From positions 1 through 64,000 of IMG/VR virus record IMGVR_UViG_3300042691_042003: a stretch of DNA of 64,000 nt, one strand, 5' to 3'. The stretch's first letter is position 1; the number at the start of each line of letters is the position of its first letter. The notes beneath the pieces are model-generated. The model was not told where the DNA came from. It did no database searches and saw nothing but the letters and a program-made list of their open reading frames with translations. Below are positions 1 to 64,000 of the stretch, in pieces. The position numbers were made by a program, and so were the translations under genes.

Positions 1-9614
<9,614 letters not shown>

Positions 9615-24391: not shown

Positions 24392-24639
24392 TGCATAGAG
24401 ATTCTTTATATAATAAAATTCTTACTGATTTCGAAGAAAGAAAATCGATGGGATATGATTATATGAAAAATGGTTTAATATCTAAATTTGTTTCTCCTTT
24501 GCTTTTCGGCAATCCTAGATTAGAAACATTTTTAAATAAATTAGATGGAATTTTTATAGAATTAACAGAATCAGTAAAAAGGATTCAATTCTATACAAAT
24601 TACACTATAGATAAAAACGATAAGAGATTTAATAACTAA
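24391..24639 (+). CDS. Small baseplate-associated protein
   Basis: 82 aa, translationally coupled (TAATG) on both sides. Confidence 0.55.
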   Translation: MHRDSLYNKILTDFEERKSMGYDYMKNGLISKFVSPLLFGNPRLETFLNKLDGIFIELTESVKRIQFYTNYTIDKNDKRFNN

Positions 24640-34100: not shown

Positions 34101-34789
34101 AATCACCAGATTATCTAAGTAATATATTTGTACATCAAAATCATCCTGATATACAATCTTGGATCGACGAGGCCTCTGGTCTTTCAGTTAGTGCTTATAC
34201 TATAGCTAAAAAATATATTAGAAATTCTAGATTAGGAAATATACCTAAAGGTTATATAAATTCGGATATACAAAATGCTTTTTTTTATGAAGGTATCGGA
34301 ACTACTGCTAATAATTATTGTAGAGTTTCTTTTGATGATAACGATCAATATTTATTAGGACCTAGGTCAGTAGGTGCTTATTTATTTTTAAATCCTAAAT
34401 CTCATAAAGAAATGATTGTTAATGGATCTGATTCTATTTCTATGAAAACTTTAGAATTTGGAAATGAAAATGCAATTACAATTCCAATAACATTTCAATA
34501 TAGAATGACGGATTATTATGGGGCCGGAGATGTAGGTACAGGTAATGTTGCTGGATTATTAACTTCTACTTCTAGTACAAATTTAGAATATACAAAAACC
34601 ATAGGTATCGATATTTATTCTAACCCAAAAGATAAAGATAGATTTTCTTTTGACTTAGAAGTTACTGCTAGATACTATTCTACTTCTTCAGTTACCAAAG
34701 ATATTCCTACTAGAACTTTTGAAACAGCTATAGACGATCTTGCTAAAGTCGTAAAATCTATAACTCCTACTACATCTAGAGATGTTTAA
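31178..34789 (+). CDS. Large virion structural protein with coiled coils
   Basis: 1203 aa in the structural operon. Confidence 0.5.
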   Translation: MNTKYSLTTLLSNLLKLQNNGYQIITSLSDVVSSSSDTVGVDVMDSTGVIQKVYIPSYGSLKNQLVKLESDIKNISGIGDTTSSVQLSDGTFRKILVSSLQKEAEDIKSMSVPTNFNKRENWFFESFMNPLLYVSFDLTGQVKYETENIEVARYILNLDSDQKVRVFNQNFNGKSDIAFEKFVKTILDNNITFFLDKEVIDMPPRKLRFSGNFTVTNMTDVTVDETIDSATFQKRILRLQLDTLFYNDSQSRFQKTQQLKIGDSLVVNKGLKNTRYKITSIDSSTRSIDIRLVEGFDVVTIGTDVLSFYGEEKSTVTADINIGFNEYCVIFVKPIDPDSRIQSVNWSPGVGIYTNNLSIVDPKTGNSTTLSTFYQNEVVDFGAYLYSTVKDKTPPSIFGIYPDPPTIQSSDFKVFQINQHLTESGSLTKLQKLQSEKLRIQSQIQSNDKSILDLRTKIQTTKYTSEKLKDVDENQLTKLINERDSLSSLFASSIDEINKISVSEGAENLTPKYRLRGFFSYPKPKTSDRTSPQEVVQFIIQYRYVKKDGSANQPQQITFTDTDGQTRRGTFSNWVQYVTDVRERKVDPNTGKAYWVTEDLENADSVNINQVDIPIQQGEGIELRIKSISEAGWPVTPLKSDWSTIVKIDFPAEFESLADANSIIEQAKKDSVKVDLQAEITSMNLDKISDQSFTQGNKFFVSDSMHIASGFLTSENNIISLYDKLVSLETELSKIRALVTVAKGTLSVRIVDESGQEYKVENNSTVKIFAGNYRDEVQSLQVQKGVILSKNYFVKISNSSASTLEMYSRIYGSRFDRVNYSFNNNDEDANFNQNDTDYNNIRRYDYVPVGLSNPDPDHVEQYGFIRNSPDQSSQVRGQFINSRYRSVDGKRYLYNKPFNPTVAPGSGVAPLIFSSDGYVSGFNGTWGQATTVDQMEYTIHQPFASGSSAFSGSSYFIWSGLNNISFLIGASSATQSPDYLSNIFVHQNHPDIQSWIDEASGLSVSAYTIAKKYIRNSRLGNIPKGYINSDIQNAFFYEGIGTTANNYCRVSFDDNDQYLLGPRSVGAYLFLNPKSHKEMIVNGSDSISMKTLEFGNENAITIPITFQYRMTDYYGAGDVGTGNVAGLLTSTSSTNLEYTKTIGIDIYSNPKDKDRFSFDLEVTARYYSTSSVTKDIPTRTFETAIDDLAKVVKSITPTTSRDV

Positions 34790-37800: not shown

Positions 37801-39651
37801 TTTTCATGCGTCCTTACATATTCTAATGCAGGAACTCAAATGACTTTTTTAAAAAATGATAAATGGAAAAATTTAACCTTAGTTATTCAATCAGAATTAA
37901 GAGATCCTATACTTCTTTCATATAATGCTGGAGGTACTTCTCATAATTTTATAGATAGATCATCTTTATATACGTTAAATCATAAAATAGGATCTACTGC
38001 TTCTACTTTAGATTATATTGATACTAATTTATCTGGTACTATTTATAAATGGGAATGGCAACCTTCTCCTCAAAGATGGAAAATTTACGGGAAAGCCGAT
38101 TTAAATGGAAATCTTCCTAATTTTAAAAAAGAATTAGTTCTTAACGAAAACGGTACATATAATGATGTAAGGCTAAAAAATCCTCAAGGAAGAATTATAG
38201 ATATAACTCAAATTTCAGAAGTTACTGAATCGACTTTCTTATGTTCTCTTAATTTTTTAGGAATCCCTGATTTAAATGACAATTCTCCAGATAATCTAGA
38301 AATAGAAGATGGTCAATTTAAACAAATTCCTTCTACTTGGCAACAGAGTAGTTCTGTTACTTCAGGTATAGGAGGTGAAATAGTTGCTCTTATATCATCT
38401 ACTCCAATACACTTAGGAGGTGGATATAATGCTTATCTACCTATAACCGAAGAAATTTCTTTTGCTACTTTAGCTGATAAAATAAATAGAGGAGATCCAG
38501 AAATAAAGTATGTGAATGTTGATGAAAATGGATCTATCACTTTTAATGATTATGTAGTAGAATTAAGTAAACCTGATTTCTTAATGAAAGGAACCTATTT
38601 AAATGTTATTCCTTATAGAGAAAAACCTTCGAAATTAAGAACCGTTTCTAAAACTATTGGATATGAAATCTCTGCTCTTCCGAGGATGAGTGTTAATGAA
38701 ATTTCTAGATATCGTGGATATTATAATCCTAAATGGAGAGATTTAATTAAGTTTATAGATACAGAAGAAATAAAAAATATGAAGGATATTAACGGCAATC
38801 ATCTTACGTATAATAATATCCAAATATTAACGGATGAAGGTTATGTAAAAGATTCGAATATTTTAACTCTTAAGAATTATTATTTTAATAAGGTTAATGT
38901 AGAATCACCTACAATTCTTCTTCGAAGTGATACAAAAATAGGAACCGTTTTCCCTATTTTAGGTGAAATAGCAATAGATTATAAAGATATTTTCCTTTTT
39001 AAATCTAATTGGGACACTTCTTATTATACAAAAAATACTTCTTCTACTACACAGGTTTCCGTTATAGGGGCTAGGGATCCTAAAGAAAATAAATCTTTTT
39101 TTGGATCTAAAATTATTTCTATGCCTTCTCAAATAAACTTGGAAAAATTTCCAGAAGGAGTTATAAGTGAGGTAGATCTACAATCCCCGGAAAAGATTAA
39201 AAAAATTCCTCAAAATATTACGTTTTCTATTAAAAGTAAAAAAGAATCAAAAACTTTAACTATTAATGTTTTTTCTTCTCTTGCTTTAGAAAATTTTTTA
39301 ATATCTGATGGATTTGGTACTGAATTTTATAAGTATATTGATCCAAATTATTCATTCGGAAGTAGAAATCAAGAAGACGACATTAAAAGTTACATATCGG
39401 AAAATATAACAGAAAGATATGTGGTAAAAGATATTATATTTTGGGAAAAATATCCAAAAAGAGGAGAGAATTTACCTAAAATAGAATATAATCTATCAGA
39501 TGAACAAAAGGTTAAAGCAGGATATGTTAAAACTAAAAATTTCCAAACTATTTTTAGAAATCCTGATGACCTAGATTTTAAATTGATATATAATATACCA
39601 CAAGATAGAATATATTCAGTGGCATTTACCGTCATTTTAGAGAAAAAATAA
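34810..39651 (+). CDS. Very large virion structural protein
   Basis: 1613 aa in the structural operon; no enzyme motif recognised. Confidence 0.5.
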   Translation: MAVILKRTSFGLIRTNPKLTTNIKIVADSKNQVFLESIDADPLLTKSIYKGFEVTGGSYQNDLRRFYSQGTLPLPKSIAYKVYEKDKSLEVKNRYKDQYDFTYAMGMQPKNSRIYSEEFSLFSPLWVEKDSIPDYFVIFKLDGPVTLDYNSYPSSFNLDSSKELNNLIVNPTYFFNNFLKDSKIIKTFSLKDDSFIGKYIRDYVNDELFPEASLYASLDKQNLSYWNGISYDQGGFCKKGENIYKEYTIVDKTITESDDFITMGFYRNSVVHPNILNIEFLFDDEDQEKYKFSRYFGLYVSEAELGKFEIDGNRLFLDKDNEESQLPKPIKNNVGYLDETRNQLQANKRGIKVYPKLSIGGTSIYQGRLIEWSEVQSPRFPYIKDVNGNFYSINQTNDWNSYTSLTGGTGIIDNRYLRIKNQKINWKNFSGMTQPIGYVDYLKTDKRGRPSFSFKVESKITDGDQIRIQLTDWTDPNQIDEINYHTIVADSSLSAGTSNGLVFSTKGTLQQVAFSISKCINNIQEITRENKIFSSISIGNRVIVFCRVDSENWNKIKYSLFSTSFTFPWSLPNKNISIEQKTYLPSPIETSVLISGKYYESNFTGGNDKPNTRFVINSEDLDDFYDFIDPIYVKTNLGFDTIGDYSMYLDEPIYNERGIIIGFNNLEKYLVLETKNKEDIVFYSSKKISLFQSLKNSLGFLTIFPIRDFDFDFRDTTYVKDSDSSLTDFNNWYKGSTSYGPTATFSYATIGVTAQRFIKQISADDSDFVVSGKFSSIKGIQATEVSDKKITLVNEYDRLKENDISEIALSSRVVPFINKWVYDNESVDIRENPYRLNVDQAFGYSNFSPSFEEVKRNPKFFTHEWYYLQKYPPYMSFEQKLNSYSYFDEDLNFPNIPFPGTLGSTSTYNTLTGSTGNLLSIKEDYFLSYFTRETIGGSAIPRDFKYSIFEYGDDINFSETLFRGVKVILKDRTEFSDINFNIPSLNFVSNPIYNGYKFSCVLTYSNAGTQMTFLKNDKWKNLTLVIQSELRDPILLSYNAGGTSHNFIDRSSLYTLNHKIGSTASTLDYIDTNLSGTIYKWEWQPSPQRWKIYGKADLNGNLPNFKKELVLNENGTYNDVRLKNPQGRIIDITQISEVTESTFLCSLNFLGIPDLNDNSPDNLEIEDGQFKQIPSTWQQSSSVTSGIGGEIVALISSTPIHLGGGYNAYLPITEEISFATLADKINRGDPEIKYVNVDENGSITFNDYVVELSKPDFLMKGTYLNVIPYREKPSKLRTVSKTIGYEISALPRMSVNEISRYRGYYNPKWRDLIKFIDTEEIKNMKDINGNHLTYNNIQILTDEGYVKDSNILTLKNYYFNKVNVESPTILLRSDTKIGTVFPILGEIAIDYKDIFLFKSNWDTSYYTKNTSSTTQVSVIGARDPKENKSFFGSKIISMPSQINLEKFPEGVISEVDLQSPEKIKKIPQNITFSIKSKKESKTLTINVFSSLALENFLISDGFGTEFYKYIDPNYSFGSRNQEDDIKSYISENITERYVVKDIIFWEKYPKRGENLPKIEYNLSDEQKVKAGYVKTKNFQTIFRNPDDLDFKLIYNIPQDRIYSVAFTVILEKK

Positions 39652-39663
39652 AAATATTTTTCA

Positions 39664-42600
39664 ATGCCAATAGCTATTAAAGAGTTTTTACTTTCCGATT
39701 CCATATCGGAATTATCAGAAAAACTAAATTTTAATTTTGATCAAATTGTATTAGCAGGAGGAGGACCTCCTGGACCTATAGGACCTCAAGGAGTAGCTGG
39801 TGTAGCTGGTCCTCAAGGAAAAAGAGGAGATCATTGGTTTGTTGGTGCAACAACTATTGGATTAACGGCAGATCATGATGGATCTAGCGATTTAAAAGTT
39901 CAAGATTTATTTTTAGATTCAGACGGAAATGTTTTAAAATATTTTGAAATTAGTGGTTCTACTGGATGGACTTCTACAGGTATTAATTTAAAAGGTCCTC
40001 AAGGAGTTGAAGGTGTTACCGGCGGTTCTTTCGAATGGAAAATTTATTTAGCCTCTACTGCAGGTAATGTTGTTAGTACTAATGGATTTTATGGTCCAGA
40101 TTTTAATCCTGGAACAGATAATAACGATATTAATTTTGCAATACCTACTTCTACATATAAGAATTCTATATTTTTAGGAGATCCAAATTGGTCTTATTCT
40201 TACTTAGAAGAATTCGGAACTAATCCTTATCAATCTAATGCTGCTGGATCTTCTGCTTATGTTCCGAAATTAACAATAGTACAAAAAGAGGTTAATAGTG
40301 TAGGAGTAAATGGTTTATCCTTTGGTGCTTATGGATTAACTTCAGGGATAGGTTTACAAGAAGTATATGGGGATACGACTTCACTTACCGATTCTTATTC
40401 ATTTGTTAATGCTGGTTTTATGACCGAACCTTTAGGAGCTGGATCTCATAAAACGAAATGGAGACTTTTTTCTCCTAGAGTTCCTCTAGAAATAAGAGCC
40501 GGTGATGAAATTTCATCAGGAAGTAATGTCCTTCCTTCTTCTATGAGATTAATATCGGATGAAATTGTTATTAGAAATTATAACTTAAAAAATAGTATAA
40601 AAATAAAACCTCCTTTATCTGTTAATGATCCGGACAGGATAGTAGGAACTGTAAGAGAACTATCTATTAATTCATGGGCAGAATTATTATCTTTTAGTGA
40701 CAGTGCAAATAATAACATATATTCATATATAGCCTTACAGAATGAACCAGGCGGAATTGCTCAAATGGTTCAACATTCTCATGGAAATGTAGTTATAGGT
40801 CCTACAGTAGGACCGGTTTTAAATGGAGATAGGCCTTATTCAGGATCACCTGGTTCGGTTTTAGGTGTAGGATCTCCTCAGGCTTTAGCTATAGTTAGAG
40901 ATATAACACAACCTGATACTATAGATGCTGCAGTTAGATTCATATATCCTTCGGAATTTAGAAGTTTTGCTGGGATTTCAGGAAGAAGAATCGATAAGAT
41001 AAAATCTACATGGATTGGATCTATAGTACCAGTAAGAACAAAAACAACATCTGCATGGCCAGATTTAGATTATATGGTTATCTCTTCCGGATTAGGTTCT
41101 GGGTTTATTTCAGGAGTTACAGCTGGAGGTAGAATAGGAATTACTAATACTGTTTTACATGGAGATGGTAATAAAGGATATGTTCCTCAGCATGCTTTTC
41201 ATGTATCAATAATTAAAGATAAATGGACAACTTCTGCTGGCTGGTTAGGTGATACGTCTATGAAAACTGGACCTACAGGAGAACTAGATTTTTTCTTTGC
41301 CGGTTTTGATGTTGCTAATATTCAATCATTATCCGAAGCTAGCGATTCTACAAAGAGAAGAGGAGTAGGAATAGGATTTGCTGCTAAAGAATTTGTTGAT
41401 GTTGTAGGTTCAACTTCTCTATTAGCTGTAATACAAACCTATTATAAAGGAGATTCTCCTCACGGTTCTGCTGATACTGATAATTCTGCTTTTACAGCAC
41501 CTTTTGCTCAAGGATATGGAACTCCAAATCTTTATTTACAACCATATAATACTCCTAATAATTGGGGAGATGAAAGCGGTAATGTTGCTATAGGTTTCGT
41601 TCCTAATAGCGTTTATGATCCTGGATATCCTTCGGCTCCTGGTTCAACATTTGCTTATTATAGAGGACATTATCCATTTTCGAAACTTTCTATTAATGGA
41701 TCTATTACTATAGCCGGGAAAACTAGCGGGTTTCATACTCAATTTGTAACTAGACCTAAAAATGGTATATTAGTAGAAGGACCAATTATTGGAGGTAGGG
41801 GATCTACTTACTCAGCAAAACAATACGGTAATTCTTGGTTTGGAGGTGCAGAATTTTTAAATGCAAATCCTGCTCTTCCTTACGGATTAGGTGTTCAAAA
41901 TATTAATGCTTCTTTTGATAAGCTAGTTATGGCAGGGAATTATACTACAAAGTATAGCGGATATCCTTCACCTTTCCCTGAATATTCTTTTTCGGACATG
42001 AGAACCGGTATACGAATGAAATATACAGGGACTTATAATTCAATGGAATATAATAGTCCTGATTTTGGATTTAGTACTAATAGAAATACTTTACTTACTC
42101 CTTATTCAGGGAGAGGAGGTGTAGGTCAACTTGTTGCTGGTCCTCATCATCAGCTTAATGATTTTACTCAAATCCCTTATATGATTGGTGGTCCTGGATT
42201 TACTGCTTCTAAAGTAGTTGCTGAATGGGCTTCTAGTGGAGATCTAATGCGAGGATATAGAACAAGACAGGGTGGAGCAGGCGATTCGACTTTGAACGCA
42301 GGACCTGATCCGGTTTTAGGTTGGGTATTTCCTGCAATTGGATATGAAAATAATACCGAATATTCTTCTTTAAAAATAACAGATACAATAAGTAAAGAAA
42401 TACTATATAAAGATGTTAGTGATTTAGAAAAAAGATATGTATTTTTTAATGTTGATACAGCAGGTGGTTGGGATCATGTTCCTGCAGGATCGTCTATTGG
42501 AGAAAGAGGAGGATTAAGATTTAGAGGTATTTATTATAAAATCCCTACTAATAAATCAATATGCTATCTAAGATCACCGGGAACTTATTATGGACAATAT

Positions 42601-43713
42601 TATGATCTCGTAAATACTAATGGTAGATTAATAAGAATAAGCAATGCTCAATCTTTATTCTATTTAAATGGATTTACATGGGAAGGGAAAGAAATCCCTG
42701 CTCAAATAGCTCATAGAGAAAGAGCAAAAAGATTTGATTTAACTTCATCAGAACCTACTTCTGCTACTACTACTATAATTCCTATGAAATGGGATTGGAA
42801 TAATATGAATCCAGATGGTAATGGAGCTAGAAGTAGAGAAGCTATGAAAAGATTTAATTATTATTGGCCTAGTAATTTTGCTTATTTTGATGATGGTCAT
42901 TATTACGGCCAAGAATTTACTCTTATAACTGGTGATATGAGTTCAAATAATTCTCTTTATTTAGATGGAACTCCTCCTAGTGAAGGATTTATGAAAAAAT
43001 GGGAATATTTTACTATTAATAATAACTATACTATTAGTGCTGCAGCTCCTGAAGGGAATAGAACTTTACAGGTTGAAGAAGTTTCCGAAGGAAATTTAGA
43101 TCCTTCGACTCCTGAACCATATAAATCTTATTCTCAAGGAGGTGCTGTTGGATGGAATAATAACGATAGAATATTAAAAGTAAAATCTAAAATAGTTTTA
43201 CCTTTAGCTGCGGATTCCGAGAGATTAGCTCCTGGAACTCCTTGGGGACCTTATGATTTTAATGAAAAAAGATCTATTATTTCTCCTGCAAACAATATTC
43301 CTACAGGAATTAATGAATTAGGAAGTTCGATAGAAAGATCTTCGATTGCAGGTAATAAATTAGGAACTACTATAAAATCTAATACGGTTTATAAATTTGT
43401 ATGGCTTCCTGGGGATTGGCAAATGGAAGATTTTATTTCATATAGAAATTCGGTTCCTACTAATCCAGGAGGTTTAGATGGGAGATATAGATATTTCACA
43501 AAGGATAGTAATGCTGGTACTAATAATAGAACTGTTCCAGATTATTTAATAACTGGTATCGACGGTCCAAAAAACGATGCTATAGGAGATCCTGCGTTAT
43601 ATGATCATTCAGGTGCCTGGGTTTGTATAGGAATGGAAAGATTAGTTAGAAGAAATTTCTTCGATTATGGAGCAGTAAATCCTATAGTTAAATTTGCTGA
43701 TTGGGATTTTTAA
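39664..43713 (+). CDS. Tail fibre / receptor-binding protein
   Basis: N-terminal anchor (KLNFNFDQIV), short collagen (GPPGPIGPQGVAGVAGPQG), then a Gly/Ser/aromatic-rich beta-type body. Confidence 0.65.
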   Translation: MPIAIKEFLLSDSISELSEKLNFNFDQIVLAGGGPPGPIGPQGVAGVAGPQGKRGDHWFVGATTIGLTADHDGSSDLKVQDLFLDSDGNVLKYFEISGSTGWTSTGINLKGPQGVEGVTGGSFEWKIYLASTAGNVVSTNGFYGPDFNPGTDNNDINFAIPTSTYKNSIFLGDPNWSYSYLEEFGTNPYQSNAAGSSAYVPKLTIVQKEVNSVGVNGLSFGAYGLTSGIGLQEVYGDTTSLTDSYSFVNAGFMTEPLGAGSHKTKWRLFSPRVPLEIRAGDEISSGSNVLPSSMRLISDEIVIRNYNLKNSIKIKPPLSVNDPDRIVGTVRELSINSWAELLSFSDSANNNIYSYIALQNEPGGIAQMVQHSHGNVVIGPTVGPVLNGDRPYSGSPGSVLGVGSPQALAIVRDITQPDTIDAAVRFIYPSEFRSFAGISGRRIDKIKSTWIGSIVPVRTKTTSAWPDLDYMVISSGLGSGFISGVTAGGRIGITNTVLHGDGNKGYVPQHAFHVSIIKDKWTTSAGWLGDTSMKTGPTGELDFFFAGFDVANIQSLSEASDSTKRRGVGIGFAAKEFVDVVGSTSLLAVIQTYYKGDSPHGSADTDNSAFTAPFAQGYGTPNLYLQPYNTPNNWGDESGNVAIGFVPNSVYDPGYPSAPGSTFAYYRGHYPFSKLSINGSITIAGKTSGFHTQFVTRPKNGILVEGPIIGGRGSTYSAKQYGNSWFGGAEFLNANPALPYGLGVQNINASFDKLVMAGNYTTKYSGYPSPFPEYSFSDMRTGIRMKYTGTYNSMEYNSPDFGFSTNRNTLLTPYSGRGGVGQLVAGPHHQLNDFTQIPYMIGGPGFTASKVVAEWASSGDLMRGYRTRQGGAGDSTLNAGPDPVLGWVFPAIGYENNTEYSSLKITDTISKEILYKDVSDLEKRYVFFNVDTAGGWDHVPAGSSIGERGGLRFRGIYYKIPTNKSICYLRSPGTYYGQYYDLVNTNGRLIRISNAQSLFYLNGFTWEGKEIPAQIAHRERAKRFDLTSSEPTSATTTIIPMKWDWNNMNPDGNGARSREAMKRFNYYWPSNFAYFDDGHYYGQEFTLITGDMSSNNSLYLDGTPPSEGFMKKWEYFTINNNYTISAAAPEGNRTLQVEEVSEGNLDPSTPEPYKSYSQGGAVGWNNNDRILKVKSKIVLPLAADSERLAPGTPWGPYDFNEKRSIISPANNIPTGINELGSSIERSSIAGNKLGTTIKSNTVYKFVWLPGDWQMEDFISYRNSVPTNPGGLDGRYRYFTKDSNAGTNNRTVPDYLITGIDGPKNDAIGDPALYDHSGAWVCIGMERLVRRNFFDYGAVNPIVKFADWDF

Positions 43714-52115: not shown

Positions 52116-52561
52116 TGAGTGAAGAAGAGAAAAAAGTATCAGAATTAGAAGAAGCTCTAGAAAAAGAGAGAATAGATTATTCTGCTAAGATAGGTGATCT
52201 TTTTCCAATGATTAATAAGATCGATAGAATATCCGAAGCACAAGTTTTAATGCTTTCTTATCGACATATGTTAGTAGAAAAACTTGCTAAATATCGAGCT
52301 GCTAATTACAAAAAGAAATCTAACGATCAGAATTATCGTAAGATGAGATATGAATATTATAAAACTCAACATGATGTTCGTTTAGATTATCGTGAAATAA
52401 ACGAATTTATTAGTTCTGATATGTCTCTTCGAATTAGACAAACTGATCTTCTTGAAAGTCAAATGACATTCTATAGTCAATGTATTGATACTCTCGATAG
52501 AATGGGATTTGCAATCAAAAACCGTCTTCAAATTGAAGAAATAAATAAACATTTAATGTAA
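52115..52561 (+). CDS. uvsY: Recombination mediator, UvsY-like
   Basis: Helical 148-aa protein directly before UvsW, with YEYYK...EINEFISSD. Confidence 0.55.
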   Translation: MSEEEKKVSELEEALEKERIDYSAKIGDLFPMINKIDRISEAQVLMLSYRHMLVEKLAKYRAANYKKKSNDQNYRKMRYEYYKTQHDVRLDYREINEFISSDMSLRIRQTDLLESQMTFYSQCIDTLDRMGFAIKNRLQIEEINKHLM

Positions 52562-54078
52562 TGCAATGGGAACTCACACATAATGATAAGATTCTTACTC
52601 TGAATTCTGCTTCAGAAATGGAGTTAGAGCAGCTAAAAATAACATTTACTAAAGAAGCTGCTAATGCTCGTTGGGATCCTAGAGTAAAGAAAGGTTGGTG
52701 GGATGGAAAAATATCTTATCTAAAAGCAAATCGTTATTTACCTGCAGGTTTATGGCATGAGCTAGTTGATACTGCAAAACAATATAATTTTGAAATTTCT
52801 ATTGATGGAATTGAAAGAAAATTTGATAGAGAAATAGATAAAGATGAATTTGTTTCTTGGGTAGAAGAAAAATGGGCTAATTCTTCTAGAAAACCTAGAG
52901 ATTATCAAATAGAAACAGCTTTTCAAATTATTAAGTATAAAAGTTGTTTAGCAGAACTTGCTACTTCTGCAGGTAAAACTCTTATTATATTTATGGTTTT
53001 TTCTTATCTTTTAGAAAGATTAAAAGCTAAGAAAATTCTTATGATTGTTCCAACCGTAGATCTTGTCGTGCAATCAACCGAAGATTTCTATGAATATAAT
53101 ACTGAATCGGTAAATTTAAAGCTACAGATTCAACAGATATTCTCAGGATCAGTAATTAGAGATGGAGCTAATATAGTAATCGGAACTTATCAATCCCTTG
53201 TTAAGAAAGGAAAAGAATATTTTGATTCTTTTGATACTGTTGTAGTTGATGAAACTCATAAAGCAAAATCGACTTCTATTAAATCTATTCTTGAAAAATG
53301 TGAAGAAGCTGATAGAAAATTCGGTCTTTCAGGTACAATTCCAAAACCTGGAACATTAGATAGGCTAACTCTTATGGCTTACACAGGACCTATTATTACT
53401 TCTATTCGAGCAGATTTTCTTATTGAAAAAGGACATATCACACCTTGTGAAGTTCTTGCAATAGAAATGAATTATGCTCCTCAAGATGTTAGAGAAGGAT
53501 TTAGAACTCTTCATCAAAGATCCGAAGAAGACAGAAAGAAGCTACTTAATCTAGAACAAAATTATGCAATTCAATCGGAAGAAAGGCTAGAATTTATTAC
53601 AGATATGATTTTAAAAAATCATAAAAATTCACTCGTTCTTTTTTATCGAATTGATTATGGCAATAAGTTGTATAATAAACTTCGCCAAAAGACAAATCGA
53701 AGGATATTTTATATAGACGGAAGTACCGATAAAGATCTTAGAGAACATCAAAAAGAAAATCTCGAAGAAGGAGAACAAAAGATAATGATTGCTTCTTATG
53801 GTACATTTTCAACTGGAATTAACGTAACTAATATTCATACAATTTATCTTACAGAATCTTTCAAATCTGAAGTTATTATCCGTCAATCTATTGGTAGAGG
53901 TTTAAGAAAACATTCGGATAAAAAGAAACTTGTGATCGTAGATTTTATCGATGATTATCGAATAGGTCGTTACAATAATTATCTTTTTAAGCACGGACTT
54001 AGTCGACAAGAAATTTATACAGAACAGAATTTCCCCTTTCAGATTAAGTCTATAGACCTAGGAAGGATATATAACTAA
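52561..54078 (+). CDS. uvsW: SF2 DNA helicase, UvsW-like
   Basis: PRDYQ, ATSAGKT, VVVDETH, GLSGT, YGTFSTGIN, RQSIGRGLR. Confidence 0.92.
   Translation: MQWELTHNDKILTLNSASEMELEQLKITFTKEAANARWDPRVKKGWWDGKISYLKANRYLPAGLWHELVDTAKQYNFEISIDGIERKFDREIDKDEFVSWVEEKWANSSRKPRDYQIETAFQIIKYKSCLAELATSAGKTLIIFMVFSYLLERLKAKKILMIVPTVDLVVQSTEDFYEYNTESVNLKLQIQQIFSGSVIRDGANIVIGTYQSLVKKGKEYFDSFDTVVVDETHKAKSTSIKSILEKCEEADRKFGLSGTIPKPGTLDRLTLMAYTGPIITSIRADFLIEKGHITPCEVLAIEMNYAPQDVREGFRTLHQRSEEDRKKLLNLEQNYAIQSEERLEFITDMILKNHKNSLVLFYRIDYGNKLYNKLRQKTNRRIFYIDGSTDKDLREHQKENLEEGEQKIMIASYGTFSTGINVTNIHTIYLTESFKSEVIIRQSIGRGLRKHSDKKKLVIVDFIDDYRIGRYNNYLFKHGLSRQEIYTEQNFPFQIKSIDLGRIYN
54066..54073 (+). promoter_or_regulatory. 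GATATATA putative late promoter
   Basis: Recurrent motif at the end of uvsW, 20 nt before the next ATG. Confidence 0.5.
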
Positions 54079-58359: not shown

Positions 58360-58803
58360 ATGAAATTCTTAAAAATAAGAGATGTAAAAACTCCAACTAG
58401 AGGAACTCCTCAATCAGCAGGAATCGATCTTTATATTCCTAACGATTTTCCTGAAACTACAATTCTACCTGGTCTTTCTACTTTAATTCCTTCTGGATTA
58501 AAAGTAAATGTTCCGGAAGGACACGCCTTTATTGCATTTAATAAATCTGGTGTAGCTACTAAGAAAGGACTTCAAGTTGGTGCTTGTGTAATAGATGAAG
58601 ATTATCAAGGAGAAATTCATATTCATCTTACGAATGTAGGAGATGAATCACAAATCATTAATCCAGGTGATAAAATTATTCAATGCGTTCTCCTGCCTGT
58701 TAATTATGAAACAGTTGAATTAGTAGAATCAGAAGAAGAACTTTGGAATGGTGAAATTACTCAAAGAGGAGAAGGAGGATTTGGTTCAACCGATCATAAA
58801 TAA
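58360..58803 (+). CDS. dut: Trimeric dUTPase
   Basis: Motifs 1-5: SAGIDL, KSGVA, VIDEDYQGEI, KIIQ, RGEGGFGST. Confidence 0.95.
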   Translation: MKFLKIRDVKTPTRGTPQSAGIDLYIPNDFPETTILPGLSTLIPSGLKVNVPEGHAFIAFNKSGVATKKGLQVGACVIDEDYQGEIHIHLTNVGDESQIINPGDKIIQCVLLPVNYETVELVESEEELWNGEITQRGEGGFGSTDHK

Positions 58804-58805
58804 TT

Positions 58806-59024
58806 ATGGAAAATATGAAATTAAATGTGGATTTGGCAAAAAATTCCACAGCAGTTAAATGTCAAAACGAAGAATGTGAAAGTGATCTTTTTAGAGAAGT
58901 AGCTTATCTTCGTAAAATTTCAAAATTATTTACAGGAGCACCTAACGATACTTATGTTCCTATTCCTGTGTTCCAATGTTCGGTTTGCGGGCATATAAAT
59001 AAAGAATTTATCCCAAAAATTTAA
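58806..59024 (+). CDS. Small zinc-ribbon protein
   Basis: CQNEEC...FQCSVCGH. Confidence 0.7.
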   Translation: MENMKLNVDLAKNSTAVKCQNEECESDLFREVAYLRKISKLFTGAPNDTYVPIPVFQCSVCGHINKEFIPKI

Positions 59025-60409
59025 TGATACTTGACGTAGAAGTTAACGATAACGATTTAGTTATTTCCTACTTCGATAAAGAAGGGAAGTCTAAAATCAA
59101 AAGATTTGACATACCCAGTCCTACTAATTGGACTATCTGTTCAGAACATGATCCTAAAAAAGATCCTAATTTTAAGAATTGGGATGGTAAAAGTGTAAAG
59201 AAAATTCAAGAAAAAAGATTTAATAAATGGTCGATTTATGAATTTATTCATACTTTACCAAAAGAAGATCGAGATGAATTATCTGCACTTAATTTTCCCA
59301 AAGTTCAATCGATAGATATCGAAACTGAAATTATCGATTCATTTCCAGTTCCTGAAGTTGCTCGTGAAAGAATTACAACTATTGCAATTGCAACAGAATC
59401 TAATTCTACTATCGTTTTAGGATGGAAACCAATCGATAAAAAACAAGAAAAAGAAATTTTTGATAAACATCAAGAATATCTAAAAGGATTTGGTGATTGG
59501 TCATTCAAATATATTTGTTTTGAAGACGAATATAATATGATGTATACATTCATCAATAAATTCCTACCTAATTTTTCTCTTGTCATCGGTTGGAATTTCA
59601 TGGGTTTTGACTGGAAATACATCTTTAATCGTTGTAAAAGATTAGGAATTGATGTTAGAATGGCATCTCCTTCTCATAAACTTCAAGGAAACGATAATAT
59701 TCCTGTTCATGTAGGAATGGTCGATTATCTAGATATTTATCGTCGATGGGATAGAACTGTTGCAATTAAAGAAAGTAATTCTCTAGATTTCGTTTCTAAT
59801 GCAGTCTTAGGTGTAACAAAATTAAAATATAATGGAACACTTAAAGAATTGTATGACCAAGACTATGATAAATATATTTTATATAACGCAATCGATGCTT
59901 CGCTTGTATGTTTAATACATAAGAAATTAAAAACTTTAAATTCAGTCTTATCTGTGTCTTCTTTATGTAATCTTTCAATCTACAAAGCTTCATCAGCGGT
60001 TAATCTGACTGAAGCTCTTCTCTGGAAAGGTTATTACGAAAGAAATCTTGTTATTGCAGACAGAAAGGTAGAAACTCCTCGAGGTGCATATGAAGGTGCC
60101 TATGTTAAAGAACCTGAGCCAGGTATGTTCCGAGCTGTAACTTGCTTCGATTATGCCTCTCTATATCCTTCAATTATGCGACAGTTTAATGTTTCTCCTG
60201 AATCTTTTATTGTAAAAACTCAAGATTCTAAAAAACTAGATAAACATAAAGAAGATCCAAATTATATAGTTTCGGTTAATGGTGCTATTTATGATAATAA
60301 AGAAGTATCCGTCTTAAAGGAAATTCTTACGAATTTATATTCAGAACGTAAAAGAAATAAGAACAGACACCTAGAGATCGAAAGAAAACTAGCAAAAATA
60401 AAAAAATAA
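59024..60409 (+). CDS. Family B DNA polymerase, N-terminal subunit (exonuclease + motif A; gp43A-like)
   Basis: ExoI DIETE, ExoII GWNFMGFD, ExoIII YNAID and motif A FDYASLYPSIM; it stops in the fingers before KxxxNSxYG and YxDTDS. Confidence 0.9.
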   Translation: MILDVEVNDNDLVISYFDKEGKSKIKRFDIPSPTNWTICSEHDPKKDPNFKNWDGKSVKKIQEKRFNKWSIYEFIHTLPKEDRDELSALNFPKVQSIDIETEIIDSFPVPEVARERITTIAIATESNSTIVLGWKPIDKKQEKEIFDKHQEYLKGFGDWSFKYICFEDEYNMMYTFINKFLPNFSLVIGWNFMGFDWKYIFNRCKRLGIDVRMASPSHKLQGNDNIPVHVGMVDYLDIYRRWDRTVAIKESNSLDFVSNAVLGVTKLKYNGTLKELYDQDYDKYILYNAIDASLVCLIHKKLKTLNSVLSVSSLCNLSIYKASSAVNLTEALLWKGYYERNLVIADRKVETPRGAYEGAYVKEPEPGMFRAVTCFDYASLYPSIMRQFNVSPESFIVKTQDSKKLDKHKEDPNYIVSVNGAIYDNKEVSVLKEILTNLYSERKRNKNRHLEIERKLAKIKK

Positions 60410-60412
60410 TTT

Positions 60413-61414
60413 ATGGCTAAAATTTTCGAAGAGAGGATAGAGTATAAACCATTTGAATATCCTGTTTATTATACTGAAGGATGGTTGAAACAAATGCAAG
60501 CTTTTTGGTTACATACTGAAATTCCAATGCAAGGAGATGTTAAGGATTGGAAAGAACATCTTAATGCTTCCGAAAAAAATCTTGTAGGTAATATCCTTCT
60601 TGGATTTGCACAAACCGAATGTGCAGTATCTGATTATTGGACAGGAATGGTTACAAAATGGTTTCCGAAACACGAAATTAAGCAAATGGCCATGGCTTTT
60701 GGTTCTCAGGAAACTATTCATGCTACAGCATATTCTTATCTAAACGAAACACTTGGATTAGAAGATTTCAAAGCTTTTATGCATGAGCCTTCTATTGCCG
60801 AAAAATTCGAATATCTGATTTCTACTGAAGCAGATTATACAGCTGAAGATCTAATTAATTCTGCTAGAGCTAGAAAAGATGTTGCAAAATCTATTGCTAT
60901 ATTTTCTGCTTTCGCTGAAGGAGTTTCTCTTTATTCTTCTTTTGCTGTTCTTTATTCTTTTCAAATGAGGAATCTTCTTAAAGGAATAGGTCAACAAATG
61001 AAATGGTCTGTAAGAGACGAATCTCTCCATTCAAAAATGGGTTGTCAACTTTTTCGTCACATGTGTGAAGAATATCCTAATTTGAAAGATGAAGTTCAAT
61101 CTGAAGTTGAATATGCGGCCGAACTTATGGTTGATATGGAAGAGAAATTTATTGATAAAATGTTCGAAATGGGAGATTTAGAAAATCTAAAAGCTAAAGA
61201 TCTTAAGAATTTTATCCGTAGAAGAGCTAATGAAAAGCTAGTAGAATTAGGTTATCAATCTAAATTTAATTTTGATTATAAATCAGCTGAAGAACTTTCA
61301 TGGTTCGATCATTTAACTGGTGGAGTAACTCATACAGATTTTTTTGCTATGAGAAGTACGGATTATTCAAAAGCCGGTGAAAATGAAAGCTGGGACGAGG
61401 ATGATATCTTCTAA
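60413..61414 (+). CDS. nrdB: Class I ribonucleotide reductase beta subunit
   Basis: AQTE, ETIH..AY, AEG, DESLH metal-binding motifs. Confidence 0.95.
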   Translation: MAKIFEERIEYKPFEYPVYYTEGWLKQMQAFWLHTEIPMQGDVKDWKEHLNASEKNLVGNILLGFAQTECAVSDYWTGMVTKWFPKHEIKQMAMAFGSQETIHATAYSYLNETLGLEDFKAFMHEPSIAEKFEYLISTEADYTAEDLINSARARKDVAKSIAIFSAFAEGVSLYSSFAVLYSFQMRNLLKGIGQQMKWSVRDESLHSKMGCQLFRHMCEEYPNLKDEVQSEVEYAAELMVDMEEKFIDKMFEMGDLENLKAKDLKNFIRRRANEKLVELGYQSKFNFDYKSAEELSWFDHLTGGVTHTDFFAMRSTDYSKAGENESWDEDDIF

Positions 61415-61460: not shown

Positions 61461-61577
61461 ATGAAAGGAATTTTAAGAGTTATAGGTATTTTAGTTTTGG
61501 CTTTTACATTTAGTGCTTGTACTTGTACACCTAAATCATGCCCTACTTACGAAAAAATAAAAATAAATGGAAAATAA
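61461..61577 (+). CDS. Unannotated 38-aa predicted lipoprotein
   Basis: MKGILRVIGILVLAFTFSA-C-TCTPKSCPTYEKIKINGK: basic N-region, hydrophobic core, lipobox FSAC; overlaps the nrdA start by 11 nt. Confidence 0.65.
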   Translation: MKGILRVIGILVLAFTFSACTCTPKSCPTYEKIKINGK

Positions 61578-63351
61578 AAAACATTACGGAGAACAATTTG
61601 GTTGGGAATTAGGAGTAGATTATCCGATCTGGGGTAACACTGAAATTTATGTTAAAACTATTAGCAAAGGTTATCTTCTTCCAGGAGAAACACCAAAAGA
61701 TGCTTATTGGAGAGTTTCTTCTACTGTTGCAAAGCGTTTAAGTAAACCTGAATTAGCTTCTAAATTTTTCGATTATATTTGGAAAGGATGGCTTAATTTA
61801 GCTACTCCAGTTCTTTCAAATACAGGAACCGAAAGAGGTCTCCCTATTTCATGTTTTGGTATTGATGTTGCTGATTCTATTAATGATATCGGTAAGAAAA
61901 ATTTAGAAATGATGCTTCTTGCTAAGCATGGTGGAGGTGTAGGAATTGGAATAAATCAGATCAGATCTGCAGGATCTCCTATTAAAGGAAATGGTACATC
62001 AGATGGAGTAGTTCCTTTTTGTAAAATTTACGATTCAACAATTCTTGCAACTAGTCAAGGTTCAGTAAGAAGAGGTGCCGCTTCTGTTAATATTGATATC
62101 GAACATGGAGATTTTTGGGAATGGTTAGAAATTCGTGAACCAAAAGGTGATGTTAATAGACAATCTTTAAATCTTCATCAATGTGTTGTAGTTTCTGATT
62201 CATTTATGCAAAAAGTTGAAGCAGGTGATAAAGAAGCTAGAGCAAGATGGACAGCCGTTCTTCGTAAACGTAGAACAACTGGAGAACCTTATATTATGTT
62301 TAAAGGAAATGTAAATAGAAATAATCCAGAACCTTATAAGAATTCAGGATTAAAAGTTTACATGACTAATATTTGTTCAGAAATTACTCTACATACTGAC
62401 GAATCTCATTCTTTTGTTTGTTGTCTTTCTTCTATTAATCTAGCTAAGTATGATGAATGGAAAGACACAGATCTTATCTATACTTCTACTTGGTTTTTAG
62501 ATGGTGTAATGGAAGAATTTATTCAGAAAGCAAAATATATGAGTGGTTTTGGTAATTCTGTTAGATCTGCTGAAAAAGGAAGAGCTTTAGGTTTAGGAGT
62601 TCTAGGTTGGCATACTTATCTTCAAGAAAATGGAATTCCTTTTGAAGGACTTCTTGCTCAATATGAAACTCGTAAAATCTTTTCACAAATTAAGCTAGAA
62701 TGTGAAAGGGCAAGTAGAGATATGGCAAGAGAATATGGTGAACCTCTTTGGTGTGTAGGAACCGGAATGAGAAATACACATACTCGAGCAATTGCACCTA
62801 CAGTCTCTAATTCAAAGCTTTCAGGTAATATTTCACCTGGAATCGAACCTTGGGCAGCTAATGTATTTACTGAACAAACTGCAAAAGGAACTTTTATCCG
62901 TAAAAATCCTACTTTGAAGAAATATCTTAAGAAAATGAAAATGGATAATGAAACTGTTTGGAATCAAATTCTTTCCGATGGAGGTTCTGTTCAAGGATTA
63001 GATTTTCTAGATAAATGGTTCTTTGTAGACGGTAAGCTAATTGAAATTATTGATGATTCTGTTAATTTCGATGATAAAATTCCTTTTAAAGAAGTTTTCA
63101 AAACATTCAAAGAAATTAATCAATTAGACCTTGTAAAACAAGCAGGATTAAGGCAACAATATGTAGATCAATCAGTTTCACTTAATTTAGCCTTTCCTAC
63201 AGAAGCTTCTCCTAAATTTATAAACCAAGTTCATATGGAAGCATATAAACAAGGAATTAAAACACTTTATTACATGAGAACTGAATCTGTTCTTCGAGGC
63301 GATATTGCTCAAAAAGCTCTCGATCCGGATTGTCTTTCATGTGATGGCTAA
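61567..63351 (+). CDS. nrdA: Class I ribonucleotide reductase alpha subunit (no ATP cone)
   Basis: ISCF, TNICSEI, CCLSSIN, IAPT, LYYMR and C-terminal CLSCDG. Confidence 0.95.
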   Translation: MENKKHYGEQFGWELGVDYPIWGNTEIYVKTISKGYLLPGETPKDAYWRVSSTVAKRLSKPELASKFFDYIWKGWLNLATPVLSNTGTERGLPISCFGIDVADSINDIGKKNLEMMLLAKHGGGVGIGINQIRSAGSPIKGNGTSDGVVPFCKIYDSTILATSQGSVRRGAASVNIDIEHGDFWEWLEIREPKGDVNRQSLNLHQCVVVSDSFMQKVEAGDKEARARWTAVLRKRRTTGEPYIMFKGNVNRNNPEPYKNSGLKVYMTNICSEITLHTDESHSFVCCLSSINLAKYDEWKDTDLIYTSTWFLDGVMEEFIQKAKYMSGFGNSVRSAEKGRALGLGVLGWHTYLQENGIPFEGLLAQYETRKIFSQIKLECERASRDMAREYGEPLWCVGTGMRNTHTRAIAPTVSNSKLSGNISPGIEPWAANVFTEQTAKGTFIRKNPTLKKYLKKMKMDNETVWNQILSDGGSVQGLDFLDKWFFVDGKLIEIIDDSVNFDDKIPFKEVFKTFKEINQLDLVKQAGLRQQYVDQSVSLNLAFPTEASPKFINQVHMEAYKQGIKTLYYMRTESVLRGDIAQKALDPDCLSCDG

Positions 63352-63400: not shown

Positions 63401-63430
63401 ACCCGAGATTTTTTTATCTCGGGTTTTTTT
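63401..63430 (+). terminator. Intrinsic terminator after nrdA
   Basis: ACCCGAGAT-loop-ATCTCGGGT followed by a T run. Confidence 0.85.
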
Positions 63431-63449
63431 ATTATATTAGCTTATCAAA

Positions 63450-63461: not shown

Positions 63462-63866
63462 ATGACTACAAACGAAAAATATGCAATGAATCGTACCATT
63501 GGTATATTCATGGGAGGTGAAATTATCGGTACAGAATCTTATGATAGAGGAGGATCCGAACTTGTTATTGAAAGATGGAAAGTTCCTCAAGGAATTGCTG
63601 CTTATGATGATAGTGCAAAAATAGGATATTTTCATTATGATCTTCATTGGGATCGTTTAATGTCGGTTATAGAAAAAATTGAAGAAATGGGACATTCAGT
63701 TATAATTTCTAGAACCACATGTAAAATTGTAGAAGATTTTAAAATCTATCCTATAATTGATAAGACTTCCGATGAGAAAATAGATGCTGTTTATTTAGCA
63801 ATCTGTGAATTTGTTAAGAAACATAACCATGAGCAATTTTTAGAAGATTTAAAAAATGAAAAATAG
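63462..63866 (+). CDS. Hypothetical phage protein
   Basis: 134 aa with HWDRLMSVIEKIE; no function recognised. Confidence 0.65.
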   Translation: MTTNEKYAMNRTIGIFMGGEIIGTESYDRGGSELVIERWKVPQGIAAYDDSAKIGYFHYDLHWDRLMSVIEKIEEMGHSVIISRTTCKIVEDFKIYPIIDKTSDEKIDAVYLAICEFVKKHNHEQFLEDLKNEK

Positions 63867-63891
63867 AATAACTCTTTCTGATATAATTCTA

Positions 63892-64000
63892 ATGGATCGA
63901 AAAATCCGTAGAGATATTGAAATAGAAGCAGGAATGAATCGATCTTCCCTTCGAATTCATCGTTCTAAGAAAACTTATACAAGGAAAAACAAACATAAAT
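63892..64000 (+). CDS. Small basic protein with ArfA-like tail (3'-truncated)
   Basis: MDRKIRRDIEIEAGMNRSSLRIHRSKKTYTRKNKHK..., preceded by GATATAAT. Confidence 0.45.
   Translation, partial: MDRKIRRDIEIEAGMNRSSLRIHRSKKTYTRKNKHK

What the first reader, a model, noticed from the sequence alone, without database searches (positions are those of the whole stretch)
59024..60412. Split family B DNA polymerase whose catalytic half is not adjacent
Seen: the ORF has all three exonuclease motifs and motif A, then ends at LKEILTNLYSERKRNK...KIKK in the fingers. Motif B (KxxxNSxYG) and motif C (YxDTDS) are missing, and nrdB starts 3 nt later, leaving no room for an intron or intein. No ORF in the window supplies the missing half. 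Established: gp43 split at the fingers into gp43A/gp43B occurs in some Aeromonas and Acinetobacter T4-like phages. Inference: a heterodimeric polymerase with a distantly encoded second subunit.
Basis: partly seen in the sequence, partly recalled or inferred. Interest (0 to 1): 0.6.

Follow-up and report, generated by a model that had tools for sequence, protein, structure and literature searches.

The report
Two-piece phage DNA polymerase gene
This jumbo phage encodes its only recognisable DNA polymerase as two separate proteins cut at the tip of the "fingers"; the second piece lies 4.8 kb downstream, just past the window, and the same layout is found in every related phage examined, so it is a real but already known kind of arrangement.

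Summary
ORF 59024-60409 (461 aa) holds the exonuclease motifs, motif A and the first fingers helix of a family B polymerase. It then stops, 3 nt before nrdB. The missing half exists. It is a 398-aa ORF at genome 65236-66432, on the same strand, 4,826 nt downstream and 1.2 kb beyond the window end. It carries KLAINSIYG, YTDTDS, KKKY and a C-terminal ...SLF tail.

The break aligns to about residues 501-528 of RB69 gp43, the fingertip. That is the same site as the known gp43A/gp43B split of Aeromonas phage 44RR, but a quick tree indicates an independent origin.

All 80 best IMG/VR relatives (42-84% identity) stop at the same point, and so do PAU, Chryseobacterium MA9V-1, Lak-A2 and five huge-phage (0.46-0.74 Mb) records. 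The usual gene order is PolB-N, nrdB, nrdA, small ORFs, PCNA-fold clamp, PolB-C, UvsX, with the clamp gene abutting PolB-C.

Both halves are under strong purifying selection. There is no intein or intron signal. A complex model scores 0.86 against 0.00 for the best control.

Verdict: a non-covalent two-subunit replicative polymerase. It is a new member of a known kind, with a conserved cassette that I did not find described in the papers searched.

The parts
58360..58803 (+). dUTPase gene, upstream neighbour of the cassette
   Evidence: Pfam dUTPase, E 4.1e-23. It sits in the same position in the nearest relatives.
58806..59024 (+). 72-aa ORF with two Cys pairs (CQNEEC ... CSVCGH). Its stop codon shares one base with the PolB-N start (TAATG).
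   Evidence: It is conserved directly upstream of PolB-N in relatives at 62-84% identity. It has no Pfam family.
59024..60409 (+). PolB-N subunit, 461 aa: N-terminal domain, 3'-5' exonuclease (Exo I-III), palm motif A and the first fingers helix (ERKRNK). It ends at the fingertip.
   Evidence: Residue 455 aligns to RB69 gp43 residue 495.
60413..61414 (+). nrdB (ribonucleotide reductase small chain), the first gene nested between the polymerase halves
   Evidence: Pfam Ribonuc_red_sm, E 1.3e-59. It occupies this position in most relatives.
61567..63351 (+). nrdA (ribonucleotide reductase large chain), the second nested gene
   Evidence: Pfam Ribonuc_red_lgC, E 1.4e-90. Synteny.
63401..63434 (+). 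Terminator-like hairpin (9-bp stem, 5 G-C pairs, T-run) after nrdA. It may end a PolB-N/nrdB/nrdA transcription unit.
   Evidence: Consensus scan only. The total number of such sites (3) is not above the shuffled mean of 2.0.
63462..63866 (+). 134-aa ORF of unknown function, nested between the halves
   Evidence: No Pfam family. Found in only one relative (L029).
63856..64000 (+). Start of a 53-aa ORF that runs off the window. The cassette continues beyond the window on the + strand, in genome coordinates that simply continue the window numbering: ORFs 64001-64249 and 64239-64496; the PCNA-fold sliding clamp at 64493-65239 (L002:647-1393); PolB-C at 65236-66432 (L002:1390-2586, 398 aa: motif B, motif C, KKKY, thumb, ...GALF tail); and a RecA/UvsX-like gene from 66444.
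   Evidence: The clamp stop and the PolB-C start overlap as ATGA.

Best explanation
The phage makes its replicative family B DNA polymerase from two polypeptides that assemble without a covalent join. PolB-N (461 aa) supplies the N-terminal domain, the proofreading exonuclease, the motif A strand of the palm and the first long helix of the fingers. PolB-C (398 aa) is encoded 4.8 kb downstream, directly after a PCNA-fold sliding-clamp gene. It supplies the second fingers helix with motif B, the motif C hairpin of the palm, the thumb and a C-terminal ...SLF tail that probably docks on the clamp. The chain break sits in the variable loop at the tip of the fingers. The two antiparallel finger helices and the palm sheet can therefore re-form across the subunit interface, as in the gp43A/gp43B enzymes of some T4-like phages and in an engineered split Pfu polymerase. 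Shown here: the two ORFs, their motifs, the position of the break, its conservation, the purifying selection and the absence of intein or intron signals. Inferred: physical assembly, activity, clamp docking through the tail, and the transcription units.
For: 1. Partner: it is found in the phage's own genome, and it is the only other PolB match there. It is a complete ORF with its own ATG.
2. Motifs: Exo I-III, motif A and the first fingers helix are in the N half. KLAINSIYG, YTDTDS (120-125) and KKKY (192-195) are in the C half. Both halves score above the Pfam cut-off, on complementary parts of the profile: 16-137 and 153-367 of 453.
3. Break position: N residue 455 aligns to RB69 residue 495, and C residue 10 to RB69 residue 528. 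In a multiple alignment, the junctions of all split relatives and of 44RR fall at RB69 501-526, between the two finger helices.
4. Conservation of the stop: all 80 best IMG/VR relatives have the N ORF stopping within 0-24 residues of ours, and none is fused.
5. Conservation of the cassette: the order PolN>nrdB>nrdA>clamp>PolC>UvsX is complete in 39 loci, and most other loci show the part of it they reach before the contig ends. The clamp-to-PolC spacing is 9 nt or less, or overlapping, in 39 of 44 loci.
6. Cultured and huge relatives: PAU and MA9V-1 are also split, with a clamp homologue directly upstream of the C half. Lak-A2 and four huge-phage records have the halves 10 kb or more apart, up to hundreds of kb.
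7. Selection: dN/dS is 0.05-0.13 for both halves, with matched dN.
8. Complex model: ipSAE 0.86 against 0.00 for the best of 3 controls. On the tool's calibration this mark was reached by 51 of 78 solved complexes and 2 of 108 mismatched pairs. The runs agree in at least 97% of contacts and the partner's pLDDT is 86. The contacts pair N 431-459 with C 28-53 (the finger helices) and N 356-390 with C 119-131 and 170-193 (the palm).
9. No alternative polymerase: there is no PolA, Pol III alpha or intein Pfam match in the 246-kb genome.
10. Literature: fingertip-split PolB enzymes are active (PMC3061061, PMC2988022).
Against: No experiment exists on this phage or its cultured relatives. The complex score may partly reflect the model's memory of single-chain PolB structures, so it shows likeness rather than binding. 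The halves may be on different transcripts (terminator-like hairpin after nrdA), so equal expression is not assured. Read-level confirmation of the junction could not be obtained. The record is rated 80% complete by CheckV despite its terminal repeats, so another polymerase in unassembled sequence cannot be formally excluded. The divergent split Pol III-like enzyme reported for related jumbo phages (PMC7824862) might escape the Pfam model.
Confidence: 0.88

Rival explanations
1. The halves are joined after translation by a split intein (protein trans-splicing), as in some phage and metagenomic PolB genes.
For: Split inteins do occur in PolB genes (PMC10189870). In relatives LR756500 and Lak-A2 the C half is itself cut at motif C, and Intein_splicing N and C parts flank the cut.
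Against: Neither half has an Intein_splicing or Hint match, and neither does the whole genome. The alignment to RB69 leaves no spare residues: the N half ends about 6 residues after its last aligned position and the C half aligns from residue 10. There is no Cys, Ser or Thr plus His-Asn junction signature.
Confidence: 0.02
2. The two coding parts are joined at the RNA level, with the intervening 4.8 kb acting as a giant intron or through trans-splicing.
For: Group I introns are common in phage polymerase and nrd genes (PMC2988022, PMC12880540).
Against: There is no intron family match at either junction, even at E up to 1. The intervening DNA holds conserved functional genes: nrdB, nrdA and the clamp. 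PolB-C has its own ATG overlapping the clamp stop. In relatives the halves lie on opposite strands or hundreds of kb apart.
Confidence: 0.02
3. The N half is a stand-alone exonuclease or a relic, and the C half is a decaying remnant. Replication would then rely on a host polymerase or an unrecognised one.
For: The N half alone carries a complete exonuclease active site. The halves may be transcribed separately.
Against: Every catalytic polymerase motif is intact in both halves. dN/dS is 0.05-0.13 for both, with matched rates. Both halves are kept in all relatives where enough sequence is available. No other polymerase was found.
Confidence: 0.05
4. The split is an assembly or sequencing artefact in a gene that is really contiguous.
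For: The record is a metagenome assembly. An A-rich run precedes the stop codon. Read data could not be consulted.
Against: 80 independent contigs from different samples show the same stop position and the same nested genes. Sequenced isolates PAU and MA9V-1 are annotated with two polymerase genes. What follows the stop is nrdB, not polymerase sequence.
Confidence: 0.01

Closest known systems
gp43A/gp43B split polymerases of T4-like phages (Aeromonas 44RR2.8t, 25, 31, 65; Acinetobacter 133; Petrov et al. 2006 and 2010, as cited in PMC3061061 and PMC2988022)
   Same: The break is in the fingertip between the two finger helices. The piece sizes are nearly identical (498+391 aa in 44RR against 461+398 here). 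There are two cistrons, each with its own start, and no intein. The phage 25 halves co-purify and are active (PMC2988022).
   Different: The origin is independent: 44RR groups with unsplit RB69, far from this clade. In 44RR the cistrons are 49 nt apart, and in the T4-like group 2 bp to 3 kb apart (PMC3061061). Here 4.8 kb of conserved replication genes (nrdB, nrdA, clamp) lies between them. The split is fixed in every relative sampled rather than sporadic.
Sphingomonas phage PAU gp105 / gp109 / gp110 and Chryseobacterium phage MA9V-1 ORF135 / 137 / 138
   Same: The layout is the same: PolB-N, a few genes, a PCNA-like clamp, then PolB-C. [quoted passage not shown]
   Different: Identity is only 31-33%. 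The nested genes differ: dUTPase and unknown ORFs in PAU, no nrdAB in either. The papers read list two polymerase ORFs but do not discuss a split (PMC10537231, PMC4889955).
Engineered split Pfu polymerase (Hansen et al. 2010, PMC3061061)
   Same: It is cut near the fingertip and reconstitutes full activity from separate fragments. The C fragment needs the N fragment to fold.
   Different: It is archaeal, artificial and bicistronic with coupled translation. It was studied for its acceptance of nucleotide analogues.
PhiKZ DNAP-N/DNAP-C (chimalliviruses; PMC13648687)
   Same: It is a family B phage polymerase made of two stably associated subunits encoded by non-adjacent genes, working with a clamp-related factor.
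   Different: The split lies in a large palm insertion, not the fingertip. The subunits are much larger (638+731 aa). Its partner, Rhc, is a single clamp-derived subunit fused to RNase H. It is a different phage lineage.
Split-intein PolB genes (PolB16 OarG intein, PMC10189870)
   Same: The PolB gene is in pieces. The same device appears at motif C in relatives LR756500 and Lak-A2.
   Different: No intein is present at the fingertip break or anywhere in this genome.

Membership tests
Family B DNA polymerase (Pfam PF03104 + PF00136) | Exo I (DxE), Exo II (NxxxFD) and Exo III (YxxxD) motifs | tested here: met
   DIETE at 98-102, GWNFMGFD at 189-196 and YILYNAID at 284-291 of the N half. PF03104 E 3.8e-13.
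Family B DNA polymerase (Pfam PF03104 + PF00136) | Motif A (DxxSLYPS), motif B (KxxxNSxYG) and motif C (YxDTDS) | tested here: met
   Motif A is FDYASLYPS in the N half. Motif B (KLAINSIYG) and motif C (YTDTDS, 120-125) are in the C half. PF00136 scores 67.5 and 49.5 bits against a cut-off of 23.
Family B DNA polymerase (Pfam PF03104 + PF00136) | DNA polymerase and exonuclease activity | not testable with these tools
   Needs purified protein.
Fingertip-split gp43A/gp43B type polymerase | Chain break between fingers helix N and helix P | tested here: met
   The N half ends at about RB69 residue 501, and the C half aligns from RB69 residue 528. The junction column lies next to that of 44RR.
Fingertip-split gp43A/gp43B type polymerase | Two separate cistrons with their own start and stop, and no intein or intron | tested here: met
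Fingertip-split gp43A/gp43B type polymerase | The two products form a complex | tested here: inconclusive
   The model supports binding (0.86 against a best control of 0.00), but this may come from memory of single-chain PolB folds. There is no biochemistry.
Fingertip-split gp43A/gp43B type polymerase | Common descent with the Aeromonas/Acinetobacter T4-like split genes | tested here: not met
   44RR groups with unsplit RB69 (SH-aLRT 100). This clade lies across a branch with support 100 (quick tree, midpoint root). The mechanism is the same, but the split arose separately.
Split-intein-joined PolB | Intein N and C blocks flanking the break | tested here: not met
   There is no Intein_splicing match in either half or in the genome, and no spare residues at the junction.
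PhiKZ-type split PolB | Split inside a palm insertion domain | tested here: not met
   The break here is in the fingers and there is no palm insertion (against PMC13648687).
PCNA/gp45-type sliding clamp (248-aa ORF upstream of PolB-C) | Two-domain clamp fold of about 230-260 aa | tested here: met
   AF2 pLDDT 91.8 and pTM 0.85. The top Foldseek PDB hits are all PCNA clamps: E 7.6e-11, probability 1.0, TM 0.65. hhalign to PAU gp109 gives 97.5%.
PCNA/gp45-type sliding clamp (248-aa ORF upstream of PolB-C) | Sequence homology to T4-type gp45, ring trimer, loading by gp44/62 | tested here: inconclusive
   There is no signal against 44RR gp45 or against PDB sequences. Ring formation and the clamp loader were not examined in this genome.

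The most novel reading that the evidence does not exclude
The fingertip split would be more than a tolerated accident. On this reading it is an ancient, fixed and functionally used feature of a large lineage of jumbo and huge phages: marine and freshwater contigs, PAU, Chryseobacterium phages, Lak phages and the 0.46-0.74 Mb phages. The clamp gene stays coupled to the C subunit, the N subunit sits in a separate nucleotide-supply transcription unit, and in the largest genomes the halves have drifted hundreds of kb apart. The split could let the phage control assembly or stoichiometry of proofreading against synthesis. As in split Pfu, it could also open the fingertip to unusual nucleotides.
Probability: 0.15. 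Interest if true: 0.6.

Novelty: new member of a known kind. Interest (0 to 1): 0.4.

Why it matters
It shows that a fingertip-split replicative polymerase is not a curiosity of a few T4-like Aeromonas phages. It is the standard form in every related phage examined here, a set that includes cultured PAU and MA9V-1, the Lak gut megaphages and the largest phage genomes known.

There is a practical consequence. Gene callers and marker-gene phylogenies that expect one PolB protein will see two "DNA polymerases" or a "truncated" one in these phages.

The conserved clamp/PolB-C gene pair and the PolB-N/nrdB/nrdA unit give a testable model for how such an enzyme is expressed and assembled. PAU and MA9V-1 are culturable systems in which to test it.

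Tried and rejected
- Clamp, sequence level: a profile of the clamp family against PDB sequences gave only a chance hit. hhalign against 44RR gp45 gave nothing. The clamp assignment therefore rests on the fold and on homology to PAU gp109.
- Clamp in megaphages: an HMM search for the clamp beside the C halves of the megaphage loci found it only in LR756500. The flanks there were short, so this is not informative.
- Introns: Rfam at a permissive threshold found no intron at the junctions.
- Promoters: the promoter-like scan was not above shuffled expectation and is not used.
- Tree: the careful tree search did not finish in the time limit. The quick tree is reported, with long branches for PAU and MA9V-1.
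- Fused relatives: the search for homologous proteins and the big representative search were not run. The length window of the first would hide fused full-length relatives, and the family question was already settled.
- Rejected explanations: split intein, RNA splicing, relic or stand-alone exonuclease, and assembly error (see rival explanations).

Full report
**1. What is in the window.**
The window is bases 1-64000 (+ strand) of a 246,081-bp virus record with direct terminal repeats. It is about 30% G+C. It carries myovirus-type genes such as a baseplate wedge subunit, and also a DNA helicase.

The ORF at 59024-60409 encodes 461 aa. Pfam finds the family B exonuclease domain (E 3.8e-13). It also finds the polymerase domain (E 1.3e-18), but only profile positions 16-137 of 453 are matched. 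The N half contains Exo I (DIETE, 98-102), Exo II (GWNFMGFD, 189-196), Exo III (YILYNAID, 284-291), motif A (FDYASLYPS, 375-383) and the basic first fingers helix (ERKRNK, 441-446).

The ORF ends ...KLAKIKK-TAA at 60409. Three bases later nrdB starts, followed by nrdA.

**2. The missing half.**
A PF00136 search of the whole record gives exactly two matches: the N half, and a second at 65347-66069 on the same strand. The second lies in a 398-aa ORF at genome 65236-66432 (L002:1390-2586). That is 4,826 nt after the N-half stop and 1,236 nt beyond the window end.

This ORF has motif B (KLAINSIYG), motif C (YTDTDS, 120-125), the KKKY motif (192-195) and ends ...TSGALF. Its Pfam match covers profile positions 153-367, which complement the N half. 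No PolA, Pol III alpha or intein domain is detectable in the genome. The split PolB is therefore the only recognisable DNA polymerase.

**3. Where the chain is cut.**
Against RB69 gp43 structures, N-half residue 455 aligns to RB69 residue 495 and C-half residue 10 to RB69 residue 528. From published RB69 structures (my knowledge, not tested here) the fingers span residues 469-572. On that basis the break lies in the loop at the tip, between the helix bearing R482/K486 and the helix bearing K560 (motif B).

In a multiple alignment, the junctions of all split relatives fall at RB69 501-526. So does the junction of gp43A/gp43B of Aeromonas phage 44RR2.8t (498+391 aa). No residues are left over for an intein.

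**4. Gene layout.**
Between the halves lie nrdB, nrdA, four small ORFs and a 248-aa ORF. The stop of the 248-aa ORF overlaps the PolB-C start codon as ATGA.

The 248-aa protein folds with pLDDT 91.8 into a two-domain clamp. Its best PDB matches are all PCNA rings (E 7.6e-11, probability 1.0, TM 0.65). It is homologous to PAU gp109 (hhalign 97.5%). Kazlauskas et al. had predicted gp109 to be a gp45-like clamp next to the polymerase (PMC4889955). It is also homologous to MA9V-1 ORF137 (96.8%).

A RecA/UvsX-like gene follows PolB-C. The same gene follows gp43 in cyanophage S-SM1. A terminator-like hairpin follows nrdA at 63401-63424. This hints, but no more than hints, that the two halves belong to different transcription units.

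**5. Relatives.**
A tblastn search of 50,697 phage records puts the following closest: uncultured huge phages LR756500-LR756504 and LR745206, Sphingomonas phage PAU, Chryseobacterium phages MA9V-1 and MA9V-2, and the Prevotella Lak phages. Unsplit cyanophage gp43 follows at 30% identity or less. Where both halves were located, they map to different places in each of these records:

| Record | Separation of the halves |
|---|---|
| MA9V-1 | about 2.2 kb |
| PAU | about 2.4 kb |
| LR756500 | about 10 kb |
| LR756502 | 133 kb, opposite strands |
| Lak-A2 | 222 kb |
| LR756504 | 281 kb |
| LR756501 | 619 kb on the linear record |

In IMG/VR at least 474 contigs encode a relative. In all 80 best ones (42-84% identity) the N ORF stops within 0-24 residues of ours, and none is fused. 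The order PolN>nrdB>nrdA>clamp>PolC>UvsX is complete in 39 loci. Most of the other loci show the part of it they reach before the contig ends.

Two loci, L036 and L038, show no nrdA or nrdB match but keep clamp-PolC-UvsX. Four contigs carry the C half 14-17 kb downstream. The clamp-to-PolC spacing is 9 nt or less, or overlapping, in 39 of 44 loci.

**6. One origin or several.**
A quick maximum-likelihood tree was built from concatenated halves. It places all 22 sampled members of this clade on one side of a branch with support 100. Split 44RR is sister to unsplit RB69 (support 100) on the other side, together with unsplit S-SM1 and Mosig.

The T4-like split and this one are therefore independent hits on the same permissive loop. 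Within this clade a single ancestral split is the most economical reading. The tree is only midpoint-rooted, and PAU and MA9V-1 sit on long branches.

**7. Are both halves functional?**
Against five relatives, dN/dS is 0.05-0.13 for both halves, with nearly equal dN. Synonymous sites are saturated, so the ratios are approximate. The C-terminal ...SLF tail is kept across most of the clade. It resembles the ...SLFDMFDF tail of RB69, which is known to bind the clamp (my knowledge of the T4/RB69 literature; inference here).

A complex model of the two chains scores ipSAE 0.86 against 0.00 for the best of three controls. On the tool's calibration this mark was reached by 51 of 78 solved complexes and 2 of 108 mismatched pairs. 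The runs agree in at least 97% of contacts and the partner's pLDDT is 86. The interface pairs the two finger helices (N 431-459 with C 28-53) and the motif A strand with the motif C hairpin. Because single-chain PolB structures are known, this pass shows likeness to an intact polymerase rather than proving binding.

**8. Alternatives.**
- Split intein: excluded by the absence of intein blocks and of spare residues.
- RNA splicing: no intron model matches either junction, the intervening genes are conserved and functional, and relatives have the halves on opposite strands.
- Relic or stand-alone exonuclease: contradicted by intact motifs and purifying selection on both halves.
- Assembly error: contradicted by 80 independent assemblies and two sequenced isolates.

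**9. Comparison with what is known.**
Natural fingertip splits of gp43 are described for T4-like phages 133, 44RR, 31, 25 and 65. Their cistrons lie 2 bp to 3 kb apart, and the phage 25 halves co-purify and are active (PMC3061061, PMC2988022). An engineered fingertip split of Pfu polymerase is fully active (PMC3061061). PhiKZ has a two-subunit PolB that is split in a palm insertion (PMC13648687).

In the papers searched I found no description of the clade-wide split or of the nested nrdB/nrdA/clamp cassette. Iyer et al. 2021 discuss a split Pol III-like enzyme in these phages but not this split (PMC7824862). The MA9V-1 and PAU papers list two polymerase ORFs without comment. The library is incomplete, so this is not proof of novelty.

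**10. Verdict.**
This is a real, functional two-subunit family B polymerase of a known kind, the fingertip split. It arose independently of the T4-like cases, is fixed in every related phage examined, and has a conserved replication cassette nested between the halves. Interest is moderate. It matters most for annotation, for marker-gene work, and as a natural test case for modular polymerase assembly.

Noticed in passing
L005:27721-31121 (LR756500.1); L019:1405-2214 and L022:1213-2184 (Lak-A2); L112/L113 (IMG/VR contig G003): In these relatives the C half is cut a second time at motif C (our residue ~125). In LR756500 and Lak-A2 the upstream piece ends with the N part of an Intein_splicing domain and the downstream piece begins with the C part. 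In LR756500 a 567-aa DUF7487 + REase_MTES_1575 gene lies between them. This looks like a split intein whose parts are separated by a free-standing endonuclease gene, so their polymerase would come from three ORFs. For the G003 contig only the cut at residue 125 was seen; its pieces were not scanned for intein domains.
   Followed up: partly
L005:17416-19359 (LR756500.1): A 647-aa paralogue of that DUF7487 + REase_MTES_1575 gene sits directly after PolB-N, with its start overlapping the PolB-N stop. A putative mobile nuclease gene therefore occupies the fingertip junction itself in the closest huge-phage relative.
   Followed up: partly
window 63401-63434: A strong terminator-like hairpin (9-bp stem, 5 G-C pairs, then a T-run) lies just after nrdA in a 30% G+C region. 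It would separate the two polymerase halves into different transcripts.
   Followed up: no
window 60385-60409: PolB-N ends in an A-rich run (gcaaaaataaaaaaataa). It is a possible slippery or error-prone tract, but nothing polymerase-like follows in any frame.
   Followed up: partly
window 3-9614: A very large ORF (3,203 aa, open at the window start) lies in a stretch of higher G+C (0.34-0.40 against 0.27-0.33 elsewhere). Further ORFs of 1,200-1,600 aa lie at 24639-28526, 31178-34789, 34810-39651 and 39664-43713. None was annotated here.
   Followed up: no
window 22607-24391 and 52561-54078: A baseplate wedge subunit (PHROG 219, E 4e-23) and a DNA helicase (PHROG 16, E 6e-88). Most other large ORFs tested have no PHROG family.
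   Followed up: partly
L036, L038 (IMG/VR): Two relatives at 62-69% identity show no nrdA or nrdB match between the halves but keep clamp-PolC-UvsX. PAU has dUTPase there instead. The clamp/PolB-C pair is the constant core and the nrd genes are exchangeable cargo.
   Followed up: partly
whole record G000: CheckV completeness is given as 80% although the record has direct terminal repeats.
   Followed up: no
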